Below, piece by piece: positions 12,235-33,839 of a stretch of DNA of 54,877 nt. Location of the stretch: NCBI GenBank assembly GCA_000320545.1, contig ADNK01001011.1, forward strand, positions 1 to 54,877, written 5' to 3'. Below the pieces are notes generated by a model. That model was given only the letters and a program-made list of their open reading frames with translations. It was not told the origin of the DNA and ran no database searches. Every line of letters begins with the position of its first letter. Position 1 is the first letter of the stretch. Origin of the DNA: Bigelowiella natans CCMP2755 (taxonomy: Eukaryota > Protista > Cercozoa). The translations under genes were made by a program, and so were the position numbers.

Positions 12235-12740
12235 ATGTCAATCGTAAATGATACTCAAGGAAGGGAGACGGCGCGGGGAATGTACGCGCTCTCCCAAACA
12301 AGTGATATTGATGCCCCGCCACAGCTAGTGGAACAAGATACGATACTTCCTTCTTACGAGGACCGCCTGAGAAATAGCCCGATTGCCAGTTATACGAAGG
12401 TAGCTATTCCTTCCAAAGACTTTTCACTCTTTTCGGAACAAATGGTAGAGTCTCTGCGGCCATTCGATCCTTGGTCTTGCAGAGCAAATTTTAGAGACTG
12501 TTGCCTGTTGAATCCGTTGGCGTGGCTTGCTTTTTTACCTCCGCAAGAGAAATTCGCTCACCGCTCGTTTGGATTTTGTTCTTAATAGGAGCCAGAAAAC
12601 CCCCAAAACCATCATGGAGGTTTGACTAATAACCCTAGCCAGAACTTTGGAAGCCACCAACAGGAGATTAATGAAGAAAATCCGGAGCACCTCCTCGCGT
12701 ATGAACACCAACCTTATTTATTTCATTTTCCCGAAGATAG

Positions 12741-12785
<45 letters not shown>

Positions 12786-15085
12786 GAGAGAAGGGACCAA
12801 GAGATATGAGGAAGGCAACCAAAATTTGTTGGTTTTCTTCCCTTCGTGACCCAGAAATATTTGTGGTTGAAGTAATCGGGTTTCTTTTCGGAGTGATCGT
12901 CGATCCACGACGCCATTAACAATCTATCGGTATTCTGGAAGGCGCTCACAACGAAGCAGCATCCCTTTTGCAACTAATTGGCCTCCATTTTCATCATCTT
13001 ATTTTGTTACGTCATCGTTATTTACTTCTTAGTCGACTTGGAGCGGGTAGGGGTTCGGCGTCTCCATCACCACCGCCCCTAGAGGAGGTAAAGTCTGCAC
13101 CGCATTACCCACCAGAAGGGTATGATGCGAGCTACAATCAACAAGACGACGAAGGCGAAGATGATGACTACAATGGACACGAACTTGCAATTGCGCAGCT
13201 TCTTTCCGCAATGAAGAAGTCGAACATCTGCGCAGCTTGTCGCCATGCAAAGAAGGGCGGGTGTGGCACATCTAGAGCGTACCATTACTGCGAGCGCCAT
13301 CCTGACCGAGCGACATCCGCATCTTCCTTTCGGGGGGATGCAGCAGCAGCGACTGGCACTGGGGCAAGTCGTCGAGCAGCTTCTTCGTCGTCATCGTCAT
13401 CGTCATTTTCCAAGGCCAGGTGTGCTGTCTGTCGGAGGATAAAGAAAGGCTCGTGCGGCACAGAGCGGGCCCATCCCCGCTGCCTTCGTCGTCGAGGGTG
13501 GTCAGCAGCTGCTGCTGAGGGGGTCTTGGCCGTTGTCGCCCAAGCTGCTCTTGAGGAGGAGGAGGAAGAAGGAAGGATGCGGCACAGGGGAGCTAGTGCG
13601 ATGGAGAAGAACAAGCGCCAACGACGGAGAAGGAATGACAACAACGAGGAGGCGCGAGCAGCTGGCAGCGTCCCACAGCAATGACGGAGAAGCGGCAGTG
13701 ATGATGCAGTTGGATGATGGAAAGCAGCAACAGAAATATGCCGTAGCATCAGCAGCAGCGCAGTACTCCCTCGCCGGAAGACTAAGCAGCAGCAGGAGGG
13801 TGAGAAACCAGCAGATCAACCGGGGTTTCCACCCCCCCCAGTTGAACGGAAAGTCTGGTCGTAGTACCAACGCCGCCAGCGCTAGCAGCAGTAGCGGCAG
13901 CGTGAGCAACAGCAGCAATAGCAAACAGAAACCCAAGAAGAAGCGGAATAGAATCAGCCAGCGCTGCGAGGCCTGTCGGCGTGCGAAGAAAGGCTACTGC
14001 GGCACCGATAGGGCTCATAGACATTGTTTGCGTCTCCCTGCCAATGCTCACCGTCGTAATGCTGCTGCTGCTGCTGCTGGAGGAGGAGGAGGAGGTGGAA
14101 GTAGTGGTAGCGGCAATGTTGCTAAATCTCGCCCACTGCCGCAGTCTCCTCCCGCATTCGAGAATAATAAGAAGAGTGGTGGTGGTGGTGGTGGTGGTAG
14201 CCAGCACATGAAGAATGACAAAGCCGACGAAAAACAAGGAGGAGGAGGAGGGGCGGCGGCCGCTGTCACAGGAGGAGCGAACGGGACAGATGCAGGCGCT
14301 GATGCCGCCGCCGTAGCCGCCGCCGCTTTGAGTATAATTAGTGGTGCGGCAAGCAGTGATAGGGAAGGGGACGAAAAGAAGCAGGAGGGAGGAGGAGGAG
14401 GAGGAGGAGGCGAAGAAGATGATAAGGATGGTGATGATGTGGGGGTGCAAATGACCGCAAGAACGACAGTGAAGAAAGGCATCACTGCTGCTGCTGCTGC
14501 TACTGCCAGTGGAGAGTATGAGGAAGAGGGAAAGCTAGGCGTAGGTGCTAAAGCGACGGGAGGCCCAATACAACAAGGAGAAGGGACTTTCGCAACGCCG
14601 CAGCGAGTAAAGCAGGAGCGGGAGAAGAAAGATAGAGATGGAGGGGAGAAGGAGGAGGAGCAAGAGAAGGGGGGGAGGGGAGTGCGGCAAGAGGAGAGCT
14701 CTCTTAGAAAACCATCAATGGAGGGAGGGGGGGGAAGCAGCAGCAACTGGAAGCAGCAGACACGATTCGAATCTGAATCTATCGCTGCTATGACCAAAAT
14801 ACCTACTATCATCCCCGGCGCGACGACGACTAGCAGTAGTTCTGCGAAGAAGAAGAAGAAAAAGAGGACGGCGAGCAAGCGATGCAAGGCCTGCATACGG
14901 CTAAAGAAGGGTTACTGTGGGACCGAGAGAGCGGTGGCGAGGTGTCTCAGAAGGCAGCAGCTGCTCCAAGCTAACGCTGGTAGGCAGTAATAAGTAGGAG
15001 TATTCTAAGGACTAGTAATAGCGGTGGTGGCAGTGGTGGTGAATAGCAGTAGGAGTAGTAATAGTAGTAGTAGTAGTAGTAGTGT

Positions 15086-15129
<44 letters not shown>

Positions 15130-16501
15130 AGTGTGTGTGTGTGTGTGTATTATAGTAGTGGTAGTGATATCGAAACAACCCTGGAGAGACTCTCACTCGA
15201 GGAGGGTTGTGACTAATTACAATAAATATAATGACGCCCAGTTGCAGCAGAGCAGCAGCAGCAGCAGCAGCAGTAGCATACAAAAGCTGTTGTAAAAATT
15301 CTTACGCGTACTGTGCCCCCCCCCCCCCCCCTTATTCCCCTTCATCTTCTTTACCCTCTTACTCGAAAGGCGGAGGCACGCAGCTGAAGCCTATCGTAAA
15401 CAATAAAAAGCAGAAGCTGCAACAACAACAACAACAACAACAACAATCAGCCAAGAGGAAGGCTGGATCTGCTGGTGTGAATAGCAGCAGCACCACAAGC
15501 AGCAGCAGCAGCAGCAGCATCGTAGACAGCAGCAGCCGTAGCAAGAGCAACAACAGAAAGCAGAAGAAGGAACATCCCAAGAAAAAGGCCACAGAACCAG
15601 CAGACATCAGCTTTTGCGGCAGCGACATCCCCGATTACCTCCGGAAACGAACGAAGAAGAGGATAAGGGGGGGGGACAAAAGAAGACGCGGCGCCGAGGA
15701 CAACGGGGAGAGAGTAGACTTGTCCAAAAAAGGAAATAATGGCGACACAAAGCAGAAGAAGGCCAAGACCATCAAGGAAAAGAAGGCAGCGGCGGGCTCT
15801 ACCACCACCGTCAAGGCTGAGGGGGGAGGGAAGTTAAATGCAGGGAAAAAGAAAGCAAAGAAGCAGATGATAGGTCGGGCAGGGGCTCCAGGCCAAGGAG
15901 GAGGAGGAGGAGGAGTGAAGCCGCAAGTTGAAGTCACACACTGGGCGCAGTGCGAAAAGTAGTAAGCAATCGTTCACAAATCATCGGCAAATCGACAGCA
16001 GCTGCAGCCACATGTCGTAGGATTATTGTGATCAGTAGTAGTAGCTGGTCGTTGCATTGTTTGTGGTGATGACGACGATGAGGAGGAGAGGAGGAGGAGG
16101 AGGAAGAGGATATTATGGGGTAGATCGATCCTCTTCTCGTGAGACGAACGTAAATGCAATAACAGCCACGTGTACCACTACAACATTCCTTACGTGTTGT
16201 TGTTTTGTATCACCATCATCATCATCGTCTAGGTGCAACAAGTGGAGGAAGGTCTTCAATCCCCCTAAGGGCAAGTTCTTTTGCCTGGACGTTTATAAGA
16301 AGTAATAGTGACATAGAAGAAGCAGCAGTCATCATAATCGATAACGTATGCATGATGACTCTTCTGCGGCACTCTCATCCCTAAGCAGCCCTGCATATGC
16401 TGATAGTAACATCGTAAAACACGTGTAAATGATATGATGCGTCTGAATGCACATATCCAGCTGTTCTGATCCTGAGGATGACTACGACGACGGGGAAAAT
16501 C

Positions 16502-16536
<35 letters not shown>

Positions 16537-18192
16537 ATAGTAGTAGTAATTGTAGTAGTAATTGTAGTGGTTGTTGTAGCGATACACCGGCGAAGGAGAA
16601 GCAGCATGTACCATTTGTTGAGGAGACTTATGCTATCATAATATGTGCGATCCGAAAGCAATGCCTCTCTTCTTCTCTCTCACTCTCCCTATTATTATTT
16701 TTTTTATTCTTGAAAAACAACGAGCATTAACAACAACAACAACAACAACAACAACAATAATTATAACTACAATAACGACACTGCGCCTTCTTCTTCCTGT
16801 TGTAGGTGGTGACTGATCGGGAGGCCTCCTCCTCCTCCTCCTCTTCTGTGAAAGTTGATAACTCGAAGTACCCAGGCGCTGAAGATAGCGACGACAACGA
16901 TGGCGATAAGCTGGTAAGTAACACTCTACTCTCATCCCTCTTCCCTCCCCCCCCCCCCCCCCTTCTGTGTGTGTGCGTGATTGTGTGTGTGTGTGTGTGT
17001 GTGTGTGTATGACTGTTAGATGGGACTCCATCCTTGGATAAGGCGTCGACGTAAGCTCTCGTTGGAGGAGTGCCTCTCTCGAGACCTTACAGCGGTATGC
17101 ATACGATCCAGTAGCAGCAGCAAGCAGCAGCAGTAGTAGTTAGTTGTAGCAGCAGCAGTAGTAGTAGTAGTAGTAGTTGTTGTTGTTGTAGCAGTAGTAG
17201 TAGTAGTTGTAGCAGTAGTAGTAGTAGTTGCTGTTGTTGAAGGGAAAAAAGTCATAATAATAGCCAGAATCAGACACGTCGGTGAAGATCCGCACTGTAG
17301 TCGCCTAATAACCCACTTATCCGCCCCCCTGTGAGTATGTGAGAGCGTAATACGCTGCGCCTCCTTCTCCCCCCTCCTCCCCCCCTCTCTCGCTTTGTCT
17401 GTCTTGATAGAATACGGTCAATAATAACGTATTATCATTATTACTATCATTCAGTCGGAGCAGTTCCGGAAAGCTGCACAGCAGTTTGGCGCTGCTACTT
17501 GCAAGAGGAAGAAGCGAGGTAGGTCCTGCTTCTGCTGCTGCTGCTGTAGGAATGCAATTGATGATTGTGTTGCTGAAAGCAACTGGTAGAATTAAGGTTC
17601 AGCAAGTACGGCGACCGTCGTCATCGTCCTCCTGTTGCGCACAACAGCCCAGACGCTCTCCTCGTGCCGCTGCATGCTGCATGATAGGAATTAGATGAGA
17701 AAGACCTTTGTCATCTCGAGATATGATGCGTGTGTGTGTGAGTGTGTGTGTGTGTGTGTGCGTGTGTGTGCGTGTGTGTGTGTGTATGCGTGGTTGTGTG
17801 GCTGGGGACGGCTCGTTGGGTGATGATCTTCGTTGATTCGGTCGTCAGAGGACGAGAGGCTTGCTACCTGGGGAAATAACCACCATTCGAGTAATAAGCT
17901 ACGAGCTCATGATGATGATGATGATGATGGTGATGAGATATATGTAGAGACAACAACAATTGCCCATAACCATCATCATCATCACCGCCCTGCTTATTAG
18001 GCGAATTCTCAATACCCTTTGAAGTGGCAGCACGATATGGAGACCGTATGGGATTCATGTCGAGAAAGGTGACGATGATGATGATGATGATGATGACGAT
18101 GATTATTGTTTGCTCTTCGCGGCTCATGGTGTCCTCCTCCTCCTCCGCCTCAGAATAGTAGATGATTGAAGATGATGATGAATCTCTCTTTC

Positions 18193-18240
<48 letters not shown>

Positions 18241-18308
18241 TCCCCAGGCTTTCCGTGCGTGTAAGGATGGTCTGCTAGTGAGGAAGGGCTATATACGGGT
18301 TGACAATA

Positions 18309-18343
<35 letters not shown>

Positions 18344-19096
18344 TTTTGGATGTTTTTCATGAATTTCTTCTCAACCCTACTCCCCCCCCCCCCCTCCCCC
18401 TTCTATTTCACACTTTACTTAGTTGAGGGAGGAGGAGGCTGAGCGATGCGGCCTTCCGGACCAGTGGCTGAGGGGTCTCTTCTTAGCACAGAGAGCAAAA
18501 GCAGGTTGTGTGGATGGTGGTGGAGGGTAGGGGAGGGGGGGGGGAATGTAAATGCCGCATTTGCCTCTATTTATGATGCTGCCGCTGACATGGAGAGGAG
18601 GAGGAGGAGGAGGAGGAGGAGAAAGAAGACAACAGCATAGAGAGAGGGACATAACACGACACGATGGCAACAATAAGCACAACATTTATTACAAAGAGTA
18701 GAAGGTTAGTTCATGATCCAATTTGTTGTAGTACCGTCTCTCTCTCTTCCCCTTTCCTCCTCCTCCTACTTCTACGACGATGACACGATGACGATGGTGC
18801 TATATGTGTATGGTGATGATATATCTCCAAGGCTCCTTCTTGTTTCGATTTGACGGTGATGAGGTCACCCGCGAGAAGGTTCTCAGCTTCAACAACGGAG
18901 TCAGTGAGCACAACAAGAAACTTAGTGACGACATGAAAGCAGCAGCAGCAGCAGCTGCTGCCACCTCTGCCTCCAGCAGCAACCACACTAATGGTGAGAG
19001 AACACATAATCACCTGCTGATGCTTTTCACGTGACTGCATTCATTCCAAATCAGTGCATTCTACACACATAGGGAAGGAGGGAGGGAGGGGGGAGG

Positions 19097-19138
<42 letters not shown>

Positions 19139-19667
19139 GGCGGGAAAGAAACGTATTCGTTGAGTAGTTTTGTTCTTTCTCGTGTAGGTGCTGGTGGCTC
19201 TGCCTTAGCCGTTACGGGGGACAGGAAGAAGACCACGCACTTGCTCCAAGTCGGCAAGTGCTACATCGATGCGTCTGACACAATGCGCTTTCCGAACGGG
19301 CTTCTCAACACAAATCCTGGTAATAACAAGCTAATGGTGGTGATGGCAGAGAGAAGGAACGAGCCTCTAGCATCATCGTCGCCTCCGCTATCACCACCCT
19401 TGCTTCCCTCCCCCTCCTTATGATGCTCCGTGGCTGAGTCGTCATTGATGTGATGATGATGATAGGAGGACCGAATTCTTGCGTGTTCGCATCCAGCCTC
19501 TACAAGCACTACCAACGCAATGCTCCGTATGAGTCTTCGCGGAACGTGTTCGTATCGAGGGACTGCCCAGCGGGCACCCTCCTCACCGCCAAGTGAGGAG
19601 AGCAACAACAACGACGATGACAATCACCACCACCACCACCACCACTAATCTAGACAGCAAAGATGAC

Positions 19668-19701
<34 letters not shown>

Positions 19702-19930
19702 CGGATGAAGGAAAAGAAGAGGTGGTCTCACTTCTTCAAGATCTTCATCCGCGCCGCAAATTAGACGCCGCGACCCGCGAGCTGAGCAGCGACAGGAGAA
19801 TGAATACTTACTCACCGATGGCCTTTGTTACACTCTCACACGCGCTCACACGTACACACACGTACCATAACAAGTAACCAATAAAAGAGCCACCGACATC
19901 CTTATCAACATCAACACCATCATCATCATC

Positions 19931-19966
<36 letters not shown>

Positions 19967-20272
19967 CCTCAGATTCGGCAAGGACTTCTGCACTGAGGGG
20001 TTTGTGAAGCTAGACCTTGAGCCTTGCAGCGGCGAGTGGCAAGCGATGTCAAGGGGGATGTTCCGGCCCTCCCGCATGGCCGGAACCAACCTGAAGTCCC
20101 TCCTCAAGTCGTCGGCGTCCAAGAAGAAGCGCACGCGCAAGCGCAGCAGCACAGATGGGGGTGGGGGTGCGGGCAGTAATGGGGGGTCGGGCAAGCGGCG
20201 AAGGCCTCTCACGAAGAAGGAACTCAAGGAGCAAGAGCAGATACGCCAAGTCATGCGAGCTGTCTATGGTTG

Positions 20273-20315
<43 letters not shown>

Positions 20316-20667
20316 TTTGCCTTGTTTGGAAACAGTCGTCGTCGTTTTGGTTATTATTGTTGTAGTAGTAGTGAGAGTAATAGTAGTGGTAGTAGTAGTA
20401 GTAGTGGTAGTAGTAGGAGAAAGCAGCGTTAAGACAGACGCAGTACGCAGCAAATCACTTCCAAGGGGGAGAGATGGTAGGGTATATTGCCCATCCAGAA
20501 GTAGATAGATTAGATTGATAGAAACACACGCAACCACGCAGAGCAGCCTTTTCATTGAAAGCAGCTGTCCTTTATCATCATCACCATTAATACACTCGCT
20601 CATTGTGGCTGATGATGATGATGACAATTCCACAGGGATGAGGAACCTGAAAGACCCCGCCAAGTGA
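12235..20667 (+). CDS. Large chromatin protein: 4x CxxCxxxKKGxCGTxxAxxxCxR repeats + CW-type zinc finger + divergent SET domain
   Basis: The exon chain is phase-consistent from the CW exons to the stop. CW: WAQCEK|CNKWRKV..KFFC..YKN|CSDPED (15942-16480). SET: LLVRKGYI..RGLFLAQRAKA|GSFLFRFDGDEV..THLLQVGKCYIDAS..GLLNTNP|GGPNSCVF..VFVSRDCPAGTLLTAK|FGKDF (18270-19990). The stop is at 20665-20667. A likely intron at 13501-13678 joins the two overlapping repeat ORFs. The start exons are tentative. Confidence 0.8.
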
Positions 20668-20828: not shown

Positions 20829-20871
<43 letters not shown>

Positions 20872-28820: not shown

Positions 28821-31800
28821 TCAATCGTATTTGGCCTCTGGATCTCCCAGCGGAACTAATGTGATCCCTGCAACGCTGCTGCCCCCTCCCCTTCGCTTGC
28901 CAAACGAGTCCCCGCAGGTGCAGAAGACGAGGAGGAGGATGGCGAAGCTCGTCGCCAGCACGGACTTGTGCGCGTACCACGCGCGGTCGGAGCGCGTCTG
29001 GTAGCCCTTGCAGAGCTTCTGCACGCGGAATGAGACCGATCCAGAGGGCTCGAGAGGAATCACCACAAGCACCGCGCTAGCGCCTGGCTTCTCGCACTTG
29101 TACTTGAGAATCAGCTCCGCGGACTGGTCAGGCCCGACGACCATGCTGCGCGAGGCCTCCCCTTCGATTGAAGCCGAGCAGGCGCTCTCCCCCTCCAGCA
29201 GCCGAGTTTTCGCCTCTGCGTAGCCGATCTTCTGCATCCCCTGCACAGCGGTGACGTAGAACTTGGTCTCCTCCTCGCTGGAGGAGATCACCCTCGGCTC
29301 GCCCCCCTGCAGAGCGTACTGGGAGGAAGCAGTGTTTAGCTCGACGACATCATTAGCGCCCTTGGTGCTGCCGATGTTAATGAACCCGGTTCCAAGGTCG
29401 GTCACTTGGCTCTCAGCGGCCTTCGCAGCGGAGACGGGATGCGCCTTCCAGTTGACCTCATCGTGCTCGTGCCAGCCCTCGTTGTTGTCCACCTCTCCCA
29501 CGAGGGGGGCGTTTCCGGCTAGGTCATCCTCCAGGTTTTCGGTGTCCATGTTGTCAAAGCTCTCGTCCTCGAAGCCGAAGTGGCTGGCATTGCGGATGCA
29601 CTCGTCGCGCTTGTAGAGCGGGGCGGGGATCGGGTTGCCGTCGATGTCCAGGAGCTCCTGCTCGGGGAGGTCCTCCGCCTTCAGCACCAGGTAGCCGTCC
29701 TCGCACACCTCGCACTCAACGTGCACGGCCTCCTGGTCGGGCGTGACCGTGAACGACATGATGTATTCCCACATCGCTCCGAGGATGGTTTCGGACTCCT
29801 CCGGCGTCTTGTACTGCACGCAGTGCGGGATGTGCTGGTCGTACTCCGCCTCTGCACACACTTTCGTCCAAGTGTAGGACACCTTCCCGCCGTTGGACAT
29901 CGGGATGACGACGGTCACCGCGGTCTCGCCCTCCCAGACGCAGTTGTAGGTGATGTTGATTGCGTGCACCATGTTGTCGACGAGCAGCAGCATCTCGCTC
30001 TCCTGGAAGACGGACCTGAAGCCCTGTGCCTGCACGTACTCAAAGTTGTGCTGCAAGCTTGGGTTGCAGATGGGGCGGTGCGTGAATATCATCGGCTCGA
30101 GCACTGTCACGCCCTTGTCCAGGCGCAGGAAGCTGGACTTTTGGTGCCAGACGAAGAACATCGTCGAATGCTCGAAGGGGTCCACGATAAACCGGCCGCT
30201 GCGCTTTCCAGACTTGTAGGTGCTGAAGGCGTCCTGCGTGTGTCCGTCGTCGACCACGTCCGGCTGGATCATCATCTGCTGGTCTTCACCGGTGTAGTCA
30301 GTGGAGACGTACATACCGCTCGCGAGTTTCTCCTGAAGCCTCATCGCGTCTGCAAGCGAGCGGTCAGCGCGGCATATCTTGGGAACGGTGAAGGTGATGA
30401 AGCCAGATGGCCGGATGGGGATGCGCACGCTGGCCGCTGCTGTTCCGTTGTACTCGCAGTTCCATTGGATGGTGAGACTTGAGATGTCGCCCCGACGGAG
30501 GCGAAGCCCATCAGCCGCGAAGCCCTTCAGGCGAGGGCGAGCGATGGCGTCGTGGTTGTGCACGATCGGTGCGTCAAACTCGATCACCTGAGTTTGCCAC
30601 CCGTCATCCATTCGATTGAAGATAAGCCCCATCTGTCCTTGGTCAACCACCCTGTCTGCCGCATACGATATGTAGAAAGTGCTGTGAGTGGTCTCCGCCG
30701 GCACCGTGATCGCCTTCCAGTCAGGGTTGATGCGATTGCGCTGGCCGAAGTAATGACGTGTCGGATATCCATCGCGCACCACGTTGGAGGAGAACTTCGT
30801 GTAGCCGACGTTGAATCCGGGAAGGTCGACTCCGCCTTCATCGCGGGTGACCTCCAGATGAGGGTTATTGCAGGTTTTGATGAGGTGAAGATGAATCGTG
30901 CTCATGAAGACTTTCTCCCCTCTGACCCCCCTCTCGTCGATATCGTCCTGCACCAGCTTCCAGGGCAGCGCGATAGTGACGAGAGTGCTGCCGCGTTTCT
31001 TGCAGTTGTAGATGAATCCGAGCTTTGCCGCCTTCTGAGTCTGAGTGAGGTTGAAGGGGGCGGGCGTGCCGGTACCGAGCTCCGGGTCGATGATGCTGTT
31101 TCGATGCGCAGTGATCGTTGGCTCTTCGAATATTATCTTCTCCGTAAATCCTACCTGCACTTCCCTTGAGATAACGAATCGGCTAATTGGCACCTCAGGA
31201 CCCACTTCGATCAACTGGCCGTCCGATCCAATGCCCCACGAGTAGTCGTTGCGCGGAATGCCATCCTTGACGACATCGTCCAGCTCGTAGACGCCAATGT
31301 TAAGCCCGTTGACCGTGAGCAGCTTAGGCGTATGGCCCAACTCCTTCGGGTCGCAAAACTTCCTGAATGCGAAGCTCAGCGTGCCGCGGCGGACAAGGGG
31401 AAGGGTCACAATCACGTCGGCTACGCCGGCCCGGATGCAGTTGAAGGTGACGTCCAGGGAGGCGATCTCGCGGTCCTCGAGACGGTTGCCGGCCATGTAG
31501 CTGCCCCTCAGGTCGGGGAACGCGATGGGCCCCTTAGAGTCGGAGTCGGCGAAAACAGTCGGTCTTGAGTACAGCACGTGGAAGTTGTTGTTCATCCCAA
31601 TGTAGAATGTGTAATTCCTCTGACCGCCTGGAACGATAACAGCGCGCGACCGCCTGAGTTTGGTGGACGATGCTTCCTCAAGGGATTCATCAACCTCAGG
31701 GACGAAGTACTCGGGCCGCACGAAGCCGTTGTGGATGACATTGTCGCGGCCGGGGGTGGTGCCGACAGTAAATCCGGGGATGGAGTGACCTTGAGTCCTC

Positions 31801-33839
31801 TGTACTAGTCTTTGCGTCTCAGATGACACCTCGCCGGCACACTCCTTCACGAATTGAAATCGCACGTTGCCTACCGATGTATCAAAGCTCACAGCCACCT
31901 TTGTCTTCCCTGGCTCCTTGCAGTCGAATGACACGCTCAACATCGTTGGGCGCTCAGCTGTCAGTACGTTGAATTCGCCGCCGCTTCCGAGCAGATCCGC
32001 CGTCGCCTTGACGACTGTGGAGTTGTCTGTGAAGACAACCGGCCGTGAGATCTGCATTTTGCTCACGTCTGCGTCCTTCTCCAGAGAAATGTAGAAGTTT
32101 CGCGCGTCCTCATCCGGGCCGATCTTTACCGACCTGGAGTGGCCTTGGTCCCAGCCGCGCTTTACACGTCCCTTCGAAATCACGTCGGAGCCGCCACTCG
32201 TGAGACCGACTCTCAGGTCAGTCATTGAGCCGCGGGATTTCTTGCGGAAGTGGAACAGCGATGAAGAAGAAGATGATGATGATGCTGATGCTGATGATGA
32301 TGATCTCTCAAGCTGAGCATCATCGAGAAATGTGCCCTCTTCTTCGGCAGCATCATTTCTCCCAGCGAGTGCAAAGGCGTCAATCTTGGTGCAGTTCTTG
32401 TGGACGGCGAGGGTGATACGCTCATAGCCGGTCTTGCCATCCATCCCAAACTCGAAGATAATCACCATAGGGTGGACTCCTTTCGCGAGGCACTCAAAGG
32501 TAACTTCCACCTCGAGAGCGTCGCCAATGTCCGCAATGACCTCCTCATCGTCGTCAAAGAGAGATGATGAGCGGGCAGGCCTAGCATATGGCACCGGCAC
32601 CACATCACTGCCCTTTGGCAGCGCGGCGTCCTTCCATCCAACCGTGGCCCGCGCGCCCGGAGCACCATCACCGGGGGACATGACTATGGGGCGTGCCATC
32701 TTTATCTCGTCGGTGAAGCCATCTTCATTGGCCTGCGAGACGTGAAGGGTAAGCGTTGGATATATGTCCGGGGCGATCAGAGCTGATTTCTGAAGCTGCT
32801 GCTGAGACGACGATGCGGAGGAGGAAGAGGAGGAAGACTTGCTGTAATCGGCGCAGACAGCGATGGCCACTATCGCCGCGTCGTTTTTGTTCGATCTACA
32901 CTGCCAACCTTCTGATATGTGCGGATGAGAGAAACTTAAGTGGTCTCCGAGGCGACCGCCGAGGACGTGGCACCCCCCCCCCACTACTTTCTTACGTGAT
33001 GGGCATGCTGCAAGCGCCTCGCCCATCCCCTTCTCGAGGGTACGCTTCACCTCCCGTTTTGTTTTGACACAGATCGCGGACACCTTCCACTCAGCCTCGA
33101 CTGGACCACTTGCCTCGCACCTCCACGCGTACTTGTTGGTTGGGCCGCTGGACTTGACAAGGCGCTGGCTGTTGACTTTGAAGTCGCACCCCCCACCGTA
33201 CGCGATGTAGCCGTCTTTACACCGAGCAGTGCCCGTGGTGTTTCCTGCTGGGACAATAGAGGTCACAACCTCAGACCCGTCATCCAGCTTCGAGTCTGGA
33301 ATGGCGCAGACTGCCGATATCCTCTTGCTACCCCCCCCCCGGCACATGAATCCAAACTTCGACAAAGGGTTCATTACGGCGAACGAATCTGCATGAACCA
33401 AGTGAGGAGGAGGAGGAGGAGCAGGAGGAGGAGGAGGAGGAGGAGGAGGAGCAGGAGGAGGAGGAGGAGGAGGAGGAGGAGGAGGAGGAGGAGAAGGATA
33501 GACGAATAAGAACGCCAAATTGAAGCGAATTGCATTCATTGTGCTTCAGTATTTTCAGTGAAAATAAATGGTAGAAGATCAGGAATTCGAGTTCCCAAAT
33601 ATTTCACAATGCATTCAATGTGAGAGTAGAGAATGATGGCTAATTTATATATCACTCAGCACCTGCCCCAGAACACCCTCCGCTTAAAACAATCTTGCCT
33701 TTTCCGCATTTCTCCACCATAAGGGTCTTCTTTCCGGTGGAGGATTTTAAGTGAAGGCCGTGTGATACCTGCTCACCCAACAGTAGTAGCGAAGAAGAGA
33801 CAACATACAATCAGAACTTCGAGCAGAAGTAGTACACAA

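What the first reader, a model, noticed from the sequence alone, without database searches (positions are those of the whole stretch)
12235..20667. One gene combines four unnamed Cys4 fingers, a CW finger and a SET domain
Seen: the ORF track shows only scattered fragments here. Manual splicing gives a phase-consistent chain from the CW finger (WAQCEK|CNKWRKV..FFC..N|CSDPED) through MGLHPWIRRRRK and SEQFRKAA to a SET domain and a stop at 20667. Known: zf-CW reads methylated H3K4, and CW+SET occurs in plant ASHH2/SDG8, which also carries AWS/post-SET regions; I see neither here. Inference: this is a lineage-specific reader-writer (or reader-pseudo-writer) chromatin factor, guided by a DNA- or histone-binding repeat I cannot assign to a named family.
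Basis: partly seen in the sequence, partly recalled or inferred. Interest (0 to 1): 0.8.

Follow-up and report, generated by a model that had tools for sequence, protein, structure and literature searches.

The report
Zinc-knuckle, CW, SET-like chromatin gene
A many-exon gene of the alga Bigelowiella natans encodes four copies of an undescribed zinc knuckle and a CW histone-reader finger, but its supposed SET methyltransferase domain has only weak support.

Summary
The window is nuclear DNA of the chlorarachniophyte Bigelowiella natans.

**Fingers: confirmed.** There are four copies of a C-x2-C-x7-C-G-T-x2-A-x3-C zinc knuckle. It matches no Pfam family or solved structure. A profile finds it in 81 proteins from green algae and chlorarachniophytes, often beside bromodomain, BRK, PHD, DDT or Myb domains.

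**CW finger: confirmed by motif, not by HMM.** It is split over three exons.

No SET HMM hit appears on the exons, on P0002 or on this contig. Weak evidence does point to SET:
- All family-bearing language-model neighbours are SET or PR-SET.
- The motifs lie in canonical order.
- Shuffle P ranges from 0.002 to 0.04.
- The NH and Tyr positions used in catalysis are substituted.

**One gene or two: open.** No transcript evidence was found. No relative of the C-terminal part was found in the length-limited searches that were possible.

This is a new variant of a known kind, of moderate interest.

The parts
12235..12399 (+). Predicted first coding exon (ATG at 12235), as in public model P0002
   Evidence: P0002 residues 1-56 map here. 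Donor GT at 12400. No independent support.
12589..12698 (+). Predicted exon 2
   Evidence: P0002 residues 54-92 map here. Acceptor AG at 12587-88, donor GT at 12699.
13033..13497 (+). Exon holding finger 1 (13229-13291) and finger 2 (13421-13483). The 3' end is uncertain.
   Evidence: Both fingers are intact in one frame. The public model cuts out finger 2 with a ~20-nt micro-intron. Conventional GT-AG introns, for example 13498-13678, would link this frame to the next one.
13679..14979 (+). Exon holding finger 3 (13965-14027) and finger 4 (14883-14945) in a low-complexity G/A/S/K-rich stretch. The 5' end is uncertain.
   Evidence: A 515-codon stop-free frame. Fingers found. Donor GT at 14980, with an in-frame stop at 14988 if that donor is not used.
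15370..15957 (+). K/S/Q-rich exon ending in the first CW motif (W-x-Q-C-E-K at 15942)
   Evidence: 249-codon open frame. Acceptor AG at 15368-69 after a pyrimidine run. Donor GT at 15958.
16233..16301 (+). CW middle exon (C-x-K-W-R ... F-F-C), absent from the public model
   Evidence: Ranks 2nd of 2480 stop-free pieces of the window against an HMM of the genome's own CW domains, 10.8 bits. Splice sites and phase read.
16461..16503 (+). CW last exon (C-S-D-P-E-D, fourth Cys and acidic tail)
   Evidence: Present in P0002.
16806..16913 (+). Acidic/Ser-rich linker exon
   Evidence: P0002 residues 945-981. AG at 16804-05, GT at 16914.
17020..17094 (+). Linker exon (starts M-G-L-H-P-W)
   Evidence: P0002 residues 979-1005. 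Splice sites.
17455..17518 (+). Linker exon (S-E-Q-F-R-K...)
   Evidence: P0002 residues 1003-1028. Splice sites.
18001..18068 (+). Exon upstream of the SET-like core
   Evidence: P0002 residues 1026-1050. Splice sites.
18248..18277 (+). Short exon upstream of the SET-like core
   Evidence: Present in P0002. AG at 18246-47, GT at 18278.
18423..18504 (+). SET-like N-terminal block, first half (…R-G-L-F-L-A-Q-R-A-K-A-)
   Evidence: P0002 residues 1059-1088. Aligns to the GxG...G block of the genome's own SET HMM.
18832..18993 (+). SET-like N-terminal block, second half (G-S-F-L-F-R-F-D-G-D-E-V) plus a low-complexity insert
   Evidence: P0002 residues 1086-1142. The motif is rebuilt across the 18504|18832 junction.
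19188..19319 (+). SET-like core exon (Y-I-D-A-S ... M-R-F-P-N-G), the degenerate counterpart of the RFINHSCxPN block
   Evidence: hhalign and hmmsearch place it in the SET-C register. No PDB or Pfam hit alone.
19466..19592 (+). SET-like core exon (…N-V-F-V-S-R-D-C-P-A-G-T-L-L-T-A-K)
   Evidence: No PDB or Pfam hit alone.
19706..19855 (+). Basic low-complexity exon used by the public model only. Probably not coding.
   Evidence: P0002 residues 1226-1275. It interrupts the counterpart of the E-L-x-F-D-Y-G block. Splicing 19592 directly to 19973 is in phase and restores it.
19973..20268 (+). Exon starting F-G-K-D-F (end of the SET-like core), followed by a basic tail
   Evidence: P0002 residues 1274-1374. 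No relative among proteins of 101-322 aa.
20636..20667 (+). Predicted last exon with stop TGA at 20665-20667
   Evidence: End of P0002. AG at 20634-35. Prediction only.

Best explanation
This is one intron-rich nuclear gene of Bigelowiella natans with about 18 exons (12235-20667, + strand). It encodes a chromatin-associated protein in three parts.

(1) An N-terminal array of four small zinc knuckles of an undescribed family, C-x2-C-x7-C-G-T-x2-A-x3-C, each with basic flanks. By inference they tether the protein to DNA or nucleosomes.

(2) A compact CW finger with both conserved Trp residues. By inference from the family it reads methylated histone H3K4.

(3) A very divergent SET/PR-like domain without AWS or post-SET. 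The usual NH and Tyr positions are substituted, so it is either an atypical lysine methyltransferase or, more likely, a non-catalytic SET-like module.

Shown: the fingers and their family, the CW signature, and the phase-consistent splice chain. Inferred: the SET fold, all binding functions, and that everything is one transcript.
For: Organism and public model: P0002 is EukProt Bigelowiella_natans_P013133, which is jgi Bigna1 72579. It maps exon by exon to this contig.

Fingers:
- 8 genomic matches to the back-translated motif against 0 for the control, 4 of them here.
- 9 aligned copies have invariant C, C, K-G, C-G-T, A, C.
- The profile finds 81 proteins at E<=0.001 among 1.84 billion.
- Partner domains are bromodomain x4, BRK x3, PHD+DDT, ePHD, Myb and TAFII55_N.
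- AlphaFold model with mean pLDDT 80.

CW:
- The three motifs are unique or nearly unique in the window and lie in order within 520 nt.
- The middle exon ranks 2nd of 2480 pieces against the genome's own CW HMM.
- Other CW genes of this genome are also split by introns.

SET-like:
- 26 of 30 nearest Atlas clusters for residues 1020-1300 are SET; the other 4 carry no family (score 0.94).
- 30 of 30 named clusters for residues 1060-1227 are SET or PR-SET (0.92-0.93).
- The best hhalign hit of the whole 1382-aa protein falls in the SET-C register.
- An HMM of six SET domains of this genome scores 5.7 bits, reached by 2 of 1000 shuffles, against 964 of 1000 for a control slice.
- Two motif blocks are rebuilt across splice junctions.
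Against: - No SET or PR HMM hit on the exon pieces, on P0002 or on this contig.
- No PDB sequence hit.
- hhalign gave E 0.16, probability 0.4%.
- With a broader 18-sequence SET HMM the shuffle P weakens to 0.02-0.04, and the controls reach 0.1-0.2.
- Language-model scores of 0.92-0.94 occur for a few percent of shuffled proteins, and the feature overlap (133-158) is below the 170 typical of true members.
- No CW Pfam hit at exon level.
- No transcript-derived protein or contig was found.
- From memory, the 'fgenesh1_pg' name marks the public model as ab initio.
- The frame change between fingers 2 and 3 is unresolved.
- If the donor at 14980 is unused, a stop at 14988 and an ATG at 15231 allow two genes.
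Confidence: 0.5

Rival explanations
1. There are two adjacent genes on the same strand. One is a finger-array protein ending at the stop at 14988-14990. The other is a separate CW plus SET-like protein starting at the ATG at 15231. The fusion exists only in the ab initio model and in the reader's splicing.
For: The frame of finger 4 reaches a stop three codons after the proposed donor. An in-frame ATG at 15231 opens the 243-codon ORF that ends in the first CW motif. No transcript evidence links the halves. In other organisms the finger occurs in many short proteins without other domains.
Against: The gap would be only about 240 nt, made of (GA)n and (GT)n repeats. The stretch 15231-15369 is GCA repeats plus a C14 run, which looks like an intron's pyrimidine tract rather than coding sequence. 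The donor at 14980 and acceptor at 15369 are in phase. The finger is often fused to chromatin domains elsewhere.
Confidence: 0.3
2. The C-terminal part is not a SET domain. It is a lineage-specific region of unknown fold, and the SET resemblance is a chance reading of short motifs. The protein would then be a reader or tether only (fingers plus CW).
For: Every HMM and sequence search for SET or PR was negative. The hhalign result was not significant. Shuffle P is only 0.02-0.04 with the broader HMM. The key residues are not conserved.
Against: Two language-model look-ups on different slices returned only SET families among family-bearing neighbours. The best local hhalign and hmmsearch alignments fall in the correct SET register and order.
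Confidence: 0.3
3. The locus is a decaying or non-expressed gene, or a gene-prediction artefact. Repeat-rich sequence was stitched into a model, and only the finger exons are functional.
For: No transcript-derived protein was found in collections that do hold MMETSP chlorarachniophyte transcripts. There is a frame break between fingers 2 and 3. Microsatellites fill nearly every intron.
Against: All four fingers and all CW ligands are intact. About 17 junctions are GT-AG and in phase. Long open frames of 515 and 249 codons remain. Conventional introns can bridge the frame break.
Confidence: 0.1

Closest known systems
Plant ASHH2/SDG8/EFS (CW + AWS + SET + post-SET H3K36 methyltransferase)
   Same: A CW reader finger lies N-terminal to a SET-type domain in one polypeptide (reader-writer logic).
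   Different: Here there is no AWS and no post-SET: no Pfam hit and no Cys-rich flanks. The SET-like part is below every HMM threshold and has substituted NH and Tyr positions. There is an added array of four novel zinc knuckles. No sequence relationship was detected.
PR/SET domains (PRDM family; small viral, bacterial and protist SET proteins)
   Same: Language-model neighbours include clusters carrying PF21549 PRDM2_PR. The M-R-F-x-N-G block resembles the R-F-I-N-G and F-V-N-G blocks of two B. natans PR-like SET genes on C2715 and C710.
   Different: PF21549 hits C378, C2715 and C710 in this genome but not this contig. No C2H2 array is present.
CXXC zinc finger (PF02008), as in KMT2/MLL, CFP1, DNMT1
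   Same: A C-x2-C ... C-G spacing, basic character, and occurrence in chromatin proteins including SET enzymes. A DNA-tethering role is plausible by analogy.
   Different: CXXC has eight Cys in two zinc clusters and a KFGG loop. This knuckle has four Cys and an invariant C-G-T-x2-A. There is no Pfam, PDB-sequence or fold match.
zf-CW readers MORC3/4 and ZCWPW1
   Same: The W-x2-C-x2-C-x-K-W-R core with both Trp residues and four Cys ligands.
   Different: Very compact, about 45 residues. The third aromatic position is Phe. It is encoded on three exons. It is untested for histone binding.

Membership tests
zf-CW (PF07496) | Four Cys ligands with the W-x-Q-C-x2-C-x-K-W-R core and a C-terminal C-x2-P-E-E/D | tested here: met
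   Read across three in-phase exons at 15942, 16234 and 16462. It matches the genome's own CW domains.
zf-CW (PF07496) | Pfam HMM score above the gathering threshold (27.5 bits) | tested here: inconclusive
   No hit on the exon pieces or on this contig. The domain is cut into pieces of 6, 22 and 8 residues, and the public model lacks the middle exon.
zf-CW (PF07496) | Binding of methylated H3K4 | not testable with these tools
   Needs peptide arrays or ITC.
SET (PF00856) | Pfam HMM score above the gathering threshold (22.4 bits) | tested here: not met
   No hit at E<=10 on the exon pieces, on P0002 or on this contig.
SET (PF00856) | Motif blocks in order: GxG...G-x2-I-x2-Y-x-G-E; Y-x-F...I-D-A; R-F-I-N-H-S-C-x-P-N; G-E-E-L-x-F-D-Y | tested here: inconclusive
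   Counterparts of all blocks lie in the right order. Statistics are weak: E 0.16, and shuffle P from 0.002 to 0.04.
SET (PF00856) | Catalytic and cofactor residues: N-H of NHSC and the Tyr of ELxFDY | tested here: not met
SET (PF00856) | SET beta-fold with pseudoknot | not testable with these tools
   The spliced C-terminus has no reference of 1200 aa or less (P0002 is 1382 aa), so no structure was predicted. Language-model neighbours are all SET, which is a lead only.
ASHH2/SET2-type CW-SET enzymes | AWS and post-SET Cys-rich regions flanking SET | tested here: not met
   No Pfam hit. There are only one Cys and two Cys in the flanks.
zf-CXXC (PF02008) | Eight Cys in two clusters with a KFGG loop | tested here: not met
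   Four Cys only. No Pfam hit on the fingers or on finger-only proteins.
Unnamed 'CGT' zinc knuckle (defined here, alignment A1) | R-C-x2-C-x3-K-K-G-x-C-G-T-x2-A-x3-C-L-R-R-P | tested here: met
   All four copies carry the invariant columns. P0002 scores E 2.8e-42 with 4 stretches against the profile.

The most novel reading that the evidence does not exclude
The four-Cys 'CGT' knuckle is a new DNA- or nucleosome-binding domain family of the green lineage. Chlorarachniophytes may have gained it from their green-algal endosymbiont. In B. natans an array of four has been fused to a CW reader and a cryptic PR/SET-like module. That would give a lineage-specific reader-writer (or reader-pseudo-writer) with a new targeting principle.
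Probability: 0.3. Interest if true: 0.6.

Novelty: new variant of a known kind. Interest (0 to 1): 0.45.

Why it matters
Chromatin machinery of Rhizaria is almost unstudied. A small zinc knuckle absent from Pfam and the PDB recurs beside bromodomain, BRK, PHD, DDT and Myb domains in green algae and chlorarachniophytes. It is a concrete candidate for a new chromatin-targeting domain, and it is cheap to test (zinc content, EMSA, structure).

The locus also shows how ab initio models in intron-rich protists hide domains. The public model skips the CW core exon and one finger, so it carries no annotation at all.

If the SET-like part is real, it widens the known sequence space of SET/PR folds.

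Tried and rejected
- **Pfam on ten stop-free exon pieces:** no CW or SET.
- **PF00856, PF07496 and PF21549 on the whole genome:** hits elsewhere, none on this contig.
- **PDB sequence search with the two SET-like core exons, with P0002 and with the finger profile:** nothing relevant.
- **Exon-by-exon blastp against ten SET ORFs of this genome:** noise only, E above 0.3 apart from low-complexity matches.
- **Homologue word searches:** the C-terminal 468 residues of P0002 found only itself. The last large exon found none. A PR-like SET paralogue, meant to enrich a profile, found none.
- **Transcript hunt:** an exact 30-mer of a core exon in metagenome/metatranscriptome contigs gave no match. An exact look-up of P0002 in assemblies found nothing on record.
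- **Fold search with the finger model:** no match with Foldseek or VIA-align. At 36 residues the model is probably too small.
- **Own-genome paralogue search with P0002:** only the fingers recur.
- **Left out by rule:** The only spliced sequence used was the public model P0002, by its id and as numeric slices in scripts. So there was no Pfam or HHpred run and no structure prediction on the corrected splice form.
- It was rerun with numeric slices.
- **Rejected ideas:** the window is not human or bacterial (eukaryotic 18S, B. natans). The finger is not a CXXC, fungal Zn2Cys6 or PSI domain. The only hits, to PSI-type families, were E 1.3 and 0.03, below threshold.
Full report
**What the window is.** The assembly is eukaryotic: 91.4 Mb in 3736 contigs, with a eukaryotic 18S. 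The finger profile search returned a 1382-aa protein, P0002. The collection names it EukProt Bigelowiella_natans_P013133, which is jgi Bigna1 72579, model fgenesh1_pg.20. P0002 maps exon by exon, at 85-99% identity, onto this contig from 12235 to 20273, and its last residues are encoded at 20636-20667. It is not human DNA. The model carries no Pfam domain.

**The observation.** The + strand of 12.2-20.7 kb holds only short stop-free pieces. I re-read every junction in the sequence. All are GT-AG and in phase, and the introns of about 100-480 nt are filled with (GA)n, (GT)n and trinucleotide repeats.
- It includes a 69-nt exon at 16233-16301 that the model skips.
- It counts finger 2, which the model removes with a micro-intron of about 20 nt at 13420-13442.
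- It joins 19592 directly to 19973, where the model inserts a basic low-complexity exon (19706-19855).

Exons were searched one by one by reference. The only spliced sequence I used was P0002 itself, by id or as numeric slices.

**The fingers.** Four copies of C-x2-C-x7-C-G-T-x2-A-x3-C lie at 13229-13291, 13421-13483, 13965-14027 and 14883-14945. Each has a basic run before it and L-R-R-(P) after it.
- A back-translated pattern matches 8 places in the genome against 0 for the reversed control. Four are here and four are on C539, C2641, C3454 and C3597. A second copy on C3597 brings the total to nine.
- One of the others closes a 416-aa ORF that contains an ankyrin-like region.
- The nine copies share invariant C, C, K-G, C-G-T, A, C.
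- A profile of them finds 81 proteins at E<=0.001 among 1.84 billion representatives, 15 of them at E<=1e-10.
- Named members come from chlorarachniophytes (Norrisiella, Lotharella, Chlorarachnion, Amorphochlora) and from green algae (Pyramimonas, Coccomyxa, Elliptochloris, Chromochloris, Klebsormidium). There is also one transcript from the rhizarian Leptophrys, an algal predator, so that one may be prey contamination. A large unnamed marine cluster from JGI/IMG and Tara samples also matches.
- Of the 79 other members scanned, partner domains are bromodomain (4), BRK (3), PHD+DDT, ePHD, Myb, TAFII55_N, ankyrin and mTERF.
- The finger has no Pfam match, even in proteins that are little more than the finger. 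It has no PDB sequence match.
- AlphaFold gives a moderately confident model: pLDDT 80, with a short helix starting at the second Cys. No fold match follows, but 36 residues is too short to conclude anything from that.

The 'unnamed Cys4 finger' is therefore a real, conserved, undescribed zinc-knuckle family tied to chromatin proteins. DNA or nucleosome binding is inferred from its basic flanks and its domain company.

The frame changes between fingers 2 and 3. Several conventional GT-AG introns, for example 13498-13678, would bridge it. An assembly indel is the alternative.

**The CW finger.** Pfam does not see it on the exon pieces or on the contig. That is expected, because it is cut into 6 + 22 + 8 residues. 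In all six frames of the window (109,750 positions) the motif W-x-Q-C-[DE] occurs once, C-x-[KNR]-W-R twice and C-x2-[PA]-E-[DE] twice. One copy of each lies in order on the + strand at 15942, 16234 and 16462, each beside a compatible splice site. From those counts the chance expectation is about 1e-4. The middle exon ranks 2nd of 2480 pieces against an HMM of this genome's own CW domains. Three of those CW genes are also intron-split. All four Cys and both Trp residues are present, and the third aromatic position is Phe. Binding to methylated H3K4 is inferred from the family (my own knowledge, untested here).

**The SET domain.** Negative results:
- No PF00856 or PF21549 hit on the exons, on P0002 or on the contig.
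- No PDB sequence hit.
- Exon-by-exon blastp against SET genes of this genome gave noise only.

Positive but weak results:
- The protein-language-model look-up of P0002 residues 1020-1300 gave 26 SET clusters among 30 neighbours, and the other 4 have no family (score 0.94).
- For residues 1060-1227, all 30 named neighbours are SET or PR-SET (0.92-0.93).
- The best hhalign match of the whole protein to six SET domains of this genome is residues 1171-1226 in the SET-C register (E 0.16).
- An HMM of those six scores the C-terminal slice at 5.7 bits, reached by 2 of 1000 shuffles, against 964 of 1000 for a control slice.
- With 18 more canonical sequences this weakens to 133 of 3000 for the slice and 52 of 3000 for the core.

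The blocks lie in canonical order. The first is R-G-L-F-L-A...G-S-F-L-F-R-F-D-G-D-E-V, rebuilt across the 18504|18832 junction. The second is Y-I-D-A-S...M-R-F-P-N-G. The third is N-V-F-V-S-R-D-x-P-A-G-T-L-L-T-A-K-F-G-K-D-F, rebuilt across 19592|19973.

N-H is replaced by N-G, as in two PR-like SET genes of this genome. The Tyr of the D-Y motif is replaced by Phe. There is no AWS or post-SET.

I put a SET/PR-like fold at about 0.65-0.7, and catalytic competence well below that. It survives only as a distant-homology hypothesis.

**One gene or two.** No transcript-derived protein or contig was found, although the collections do hold MMETSP chlorarachniophyte transcripts. If the donor at 14980 is unused, a stop follows at 14988 and an ATG at 15231 opens the CW exon's frame. 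Against that reading, 15231-15369 is GCA repeats plus a C14 run, like the tail of an intron. I put one gene at about 0.6.

**Mechanism, comparison and novelty.** The best reading is a chromatin factor in which a zinc-knuckle array tethers the protein, a CW finger reads H3K4 methylation, and a degenerate SET/PR-like module either writes a mark or serves as a non-catalytic binding surface. It works like plant ASHH2/SDG8 (CW + SET) or like the PRDM9-ZCWPW1 pair, but it fails membership of either. No relative of the C-terminal part was found within the length windows searched, and the genome holds no paralogue. This is a new variant of a known kind. The most reusable result is the finger family.

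Noticed in passing
window 12745-12779, 15090-15150, 16960-17010, 17730-17790, 18185-18345, 19095-19135, 20280-20315, 20834-20868: Nearly every intron of this gene holds a (GA)n, (GT)n or (TA)n microsatellite, and many also hold GTA/GCA trinucleotide runs. This repeat load is why the ORF track looks fragmented.
   Followed up: no
window 28821-33539 (- strand): A single uninterrupted 1572-codon ORF sits in an otherwise intron-rich genome. It has a long poly-proline N-terminus, internally repeated Cys-containing modules and a C-terminal hydrophobic stretch. It looks like a large surface or secreted repeat protein.
   Followed up: no
P0004, P0005 (relatives of the two-finger locus L006 = G000:C3597:228511-238510): These chlorarachniophyte proteins carry two CGT knuckles and a C2H2-like finger. 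They also carry a second unnamed repeated motif (G-Q-C-x-R-N-x-N-C-x2-G-x-R-H-x-G-F-C-G-G-W) and a weak HTH_3 match at the C-terminus.
   Followed up: partly
L004 (G000:C2641) and L005 (G000:C3454): Two loci carry fingers that are 91% identical. On C3454 the finger closes a 416-aa ankyrin-like ORF. On C2641 the open frame is only 76 codons, so it may be a fragment or a split exon.
   Followed up: partly
G000:C3187:98824-100617 (L008, L010): One 489-codon open frame holds two tandem, divergent SET domains (50.1 and 29.1 bits). Both have degenerate NHSC motifs.
   Followed up: partly
window 13420-13442 and 15958-16460, against P0002: The public JGI model 72579 removes finger 2 with a micro-intron of about 20 nt and skips the CW core exon. 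This explains why the protein has no domain annotation in public resources.
   Followed up: yes
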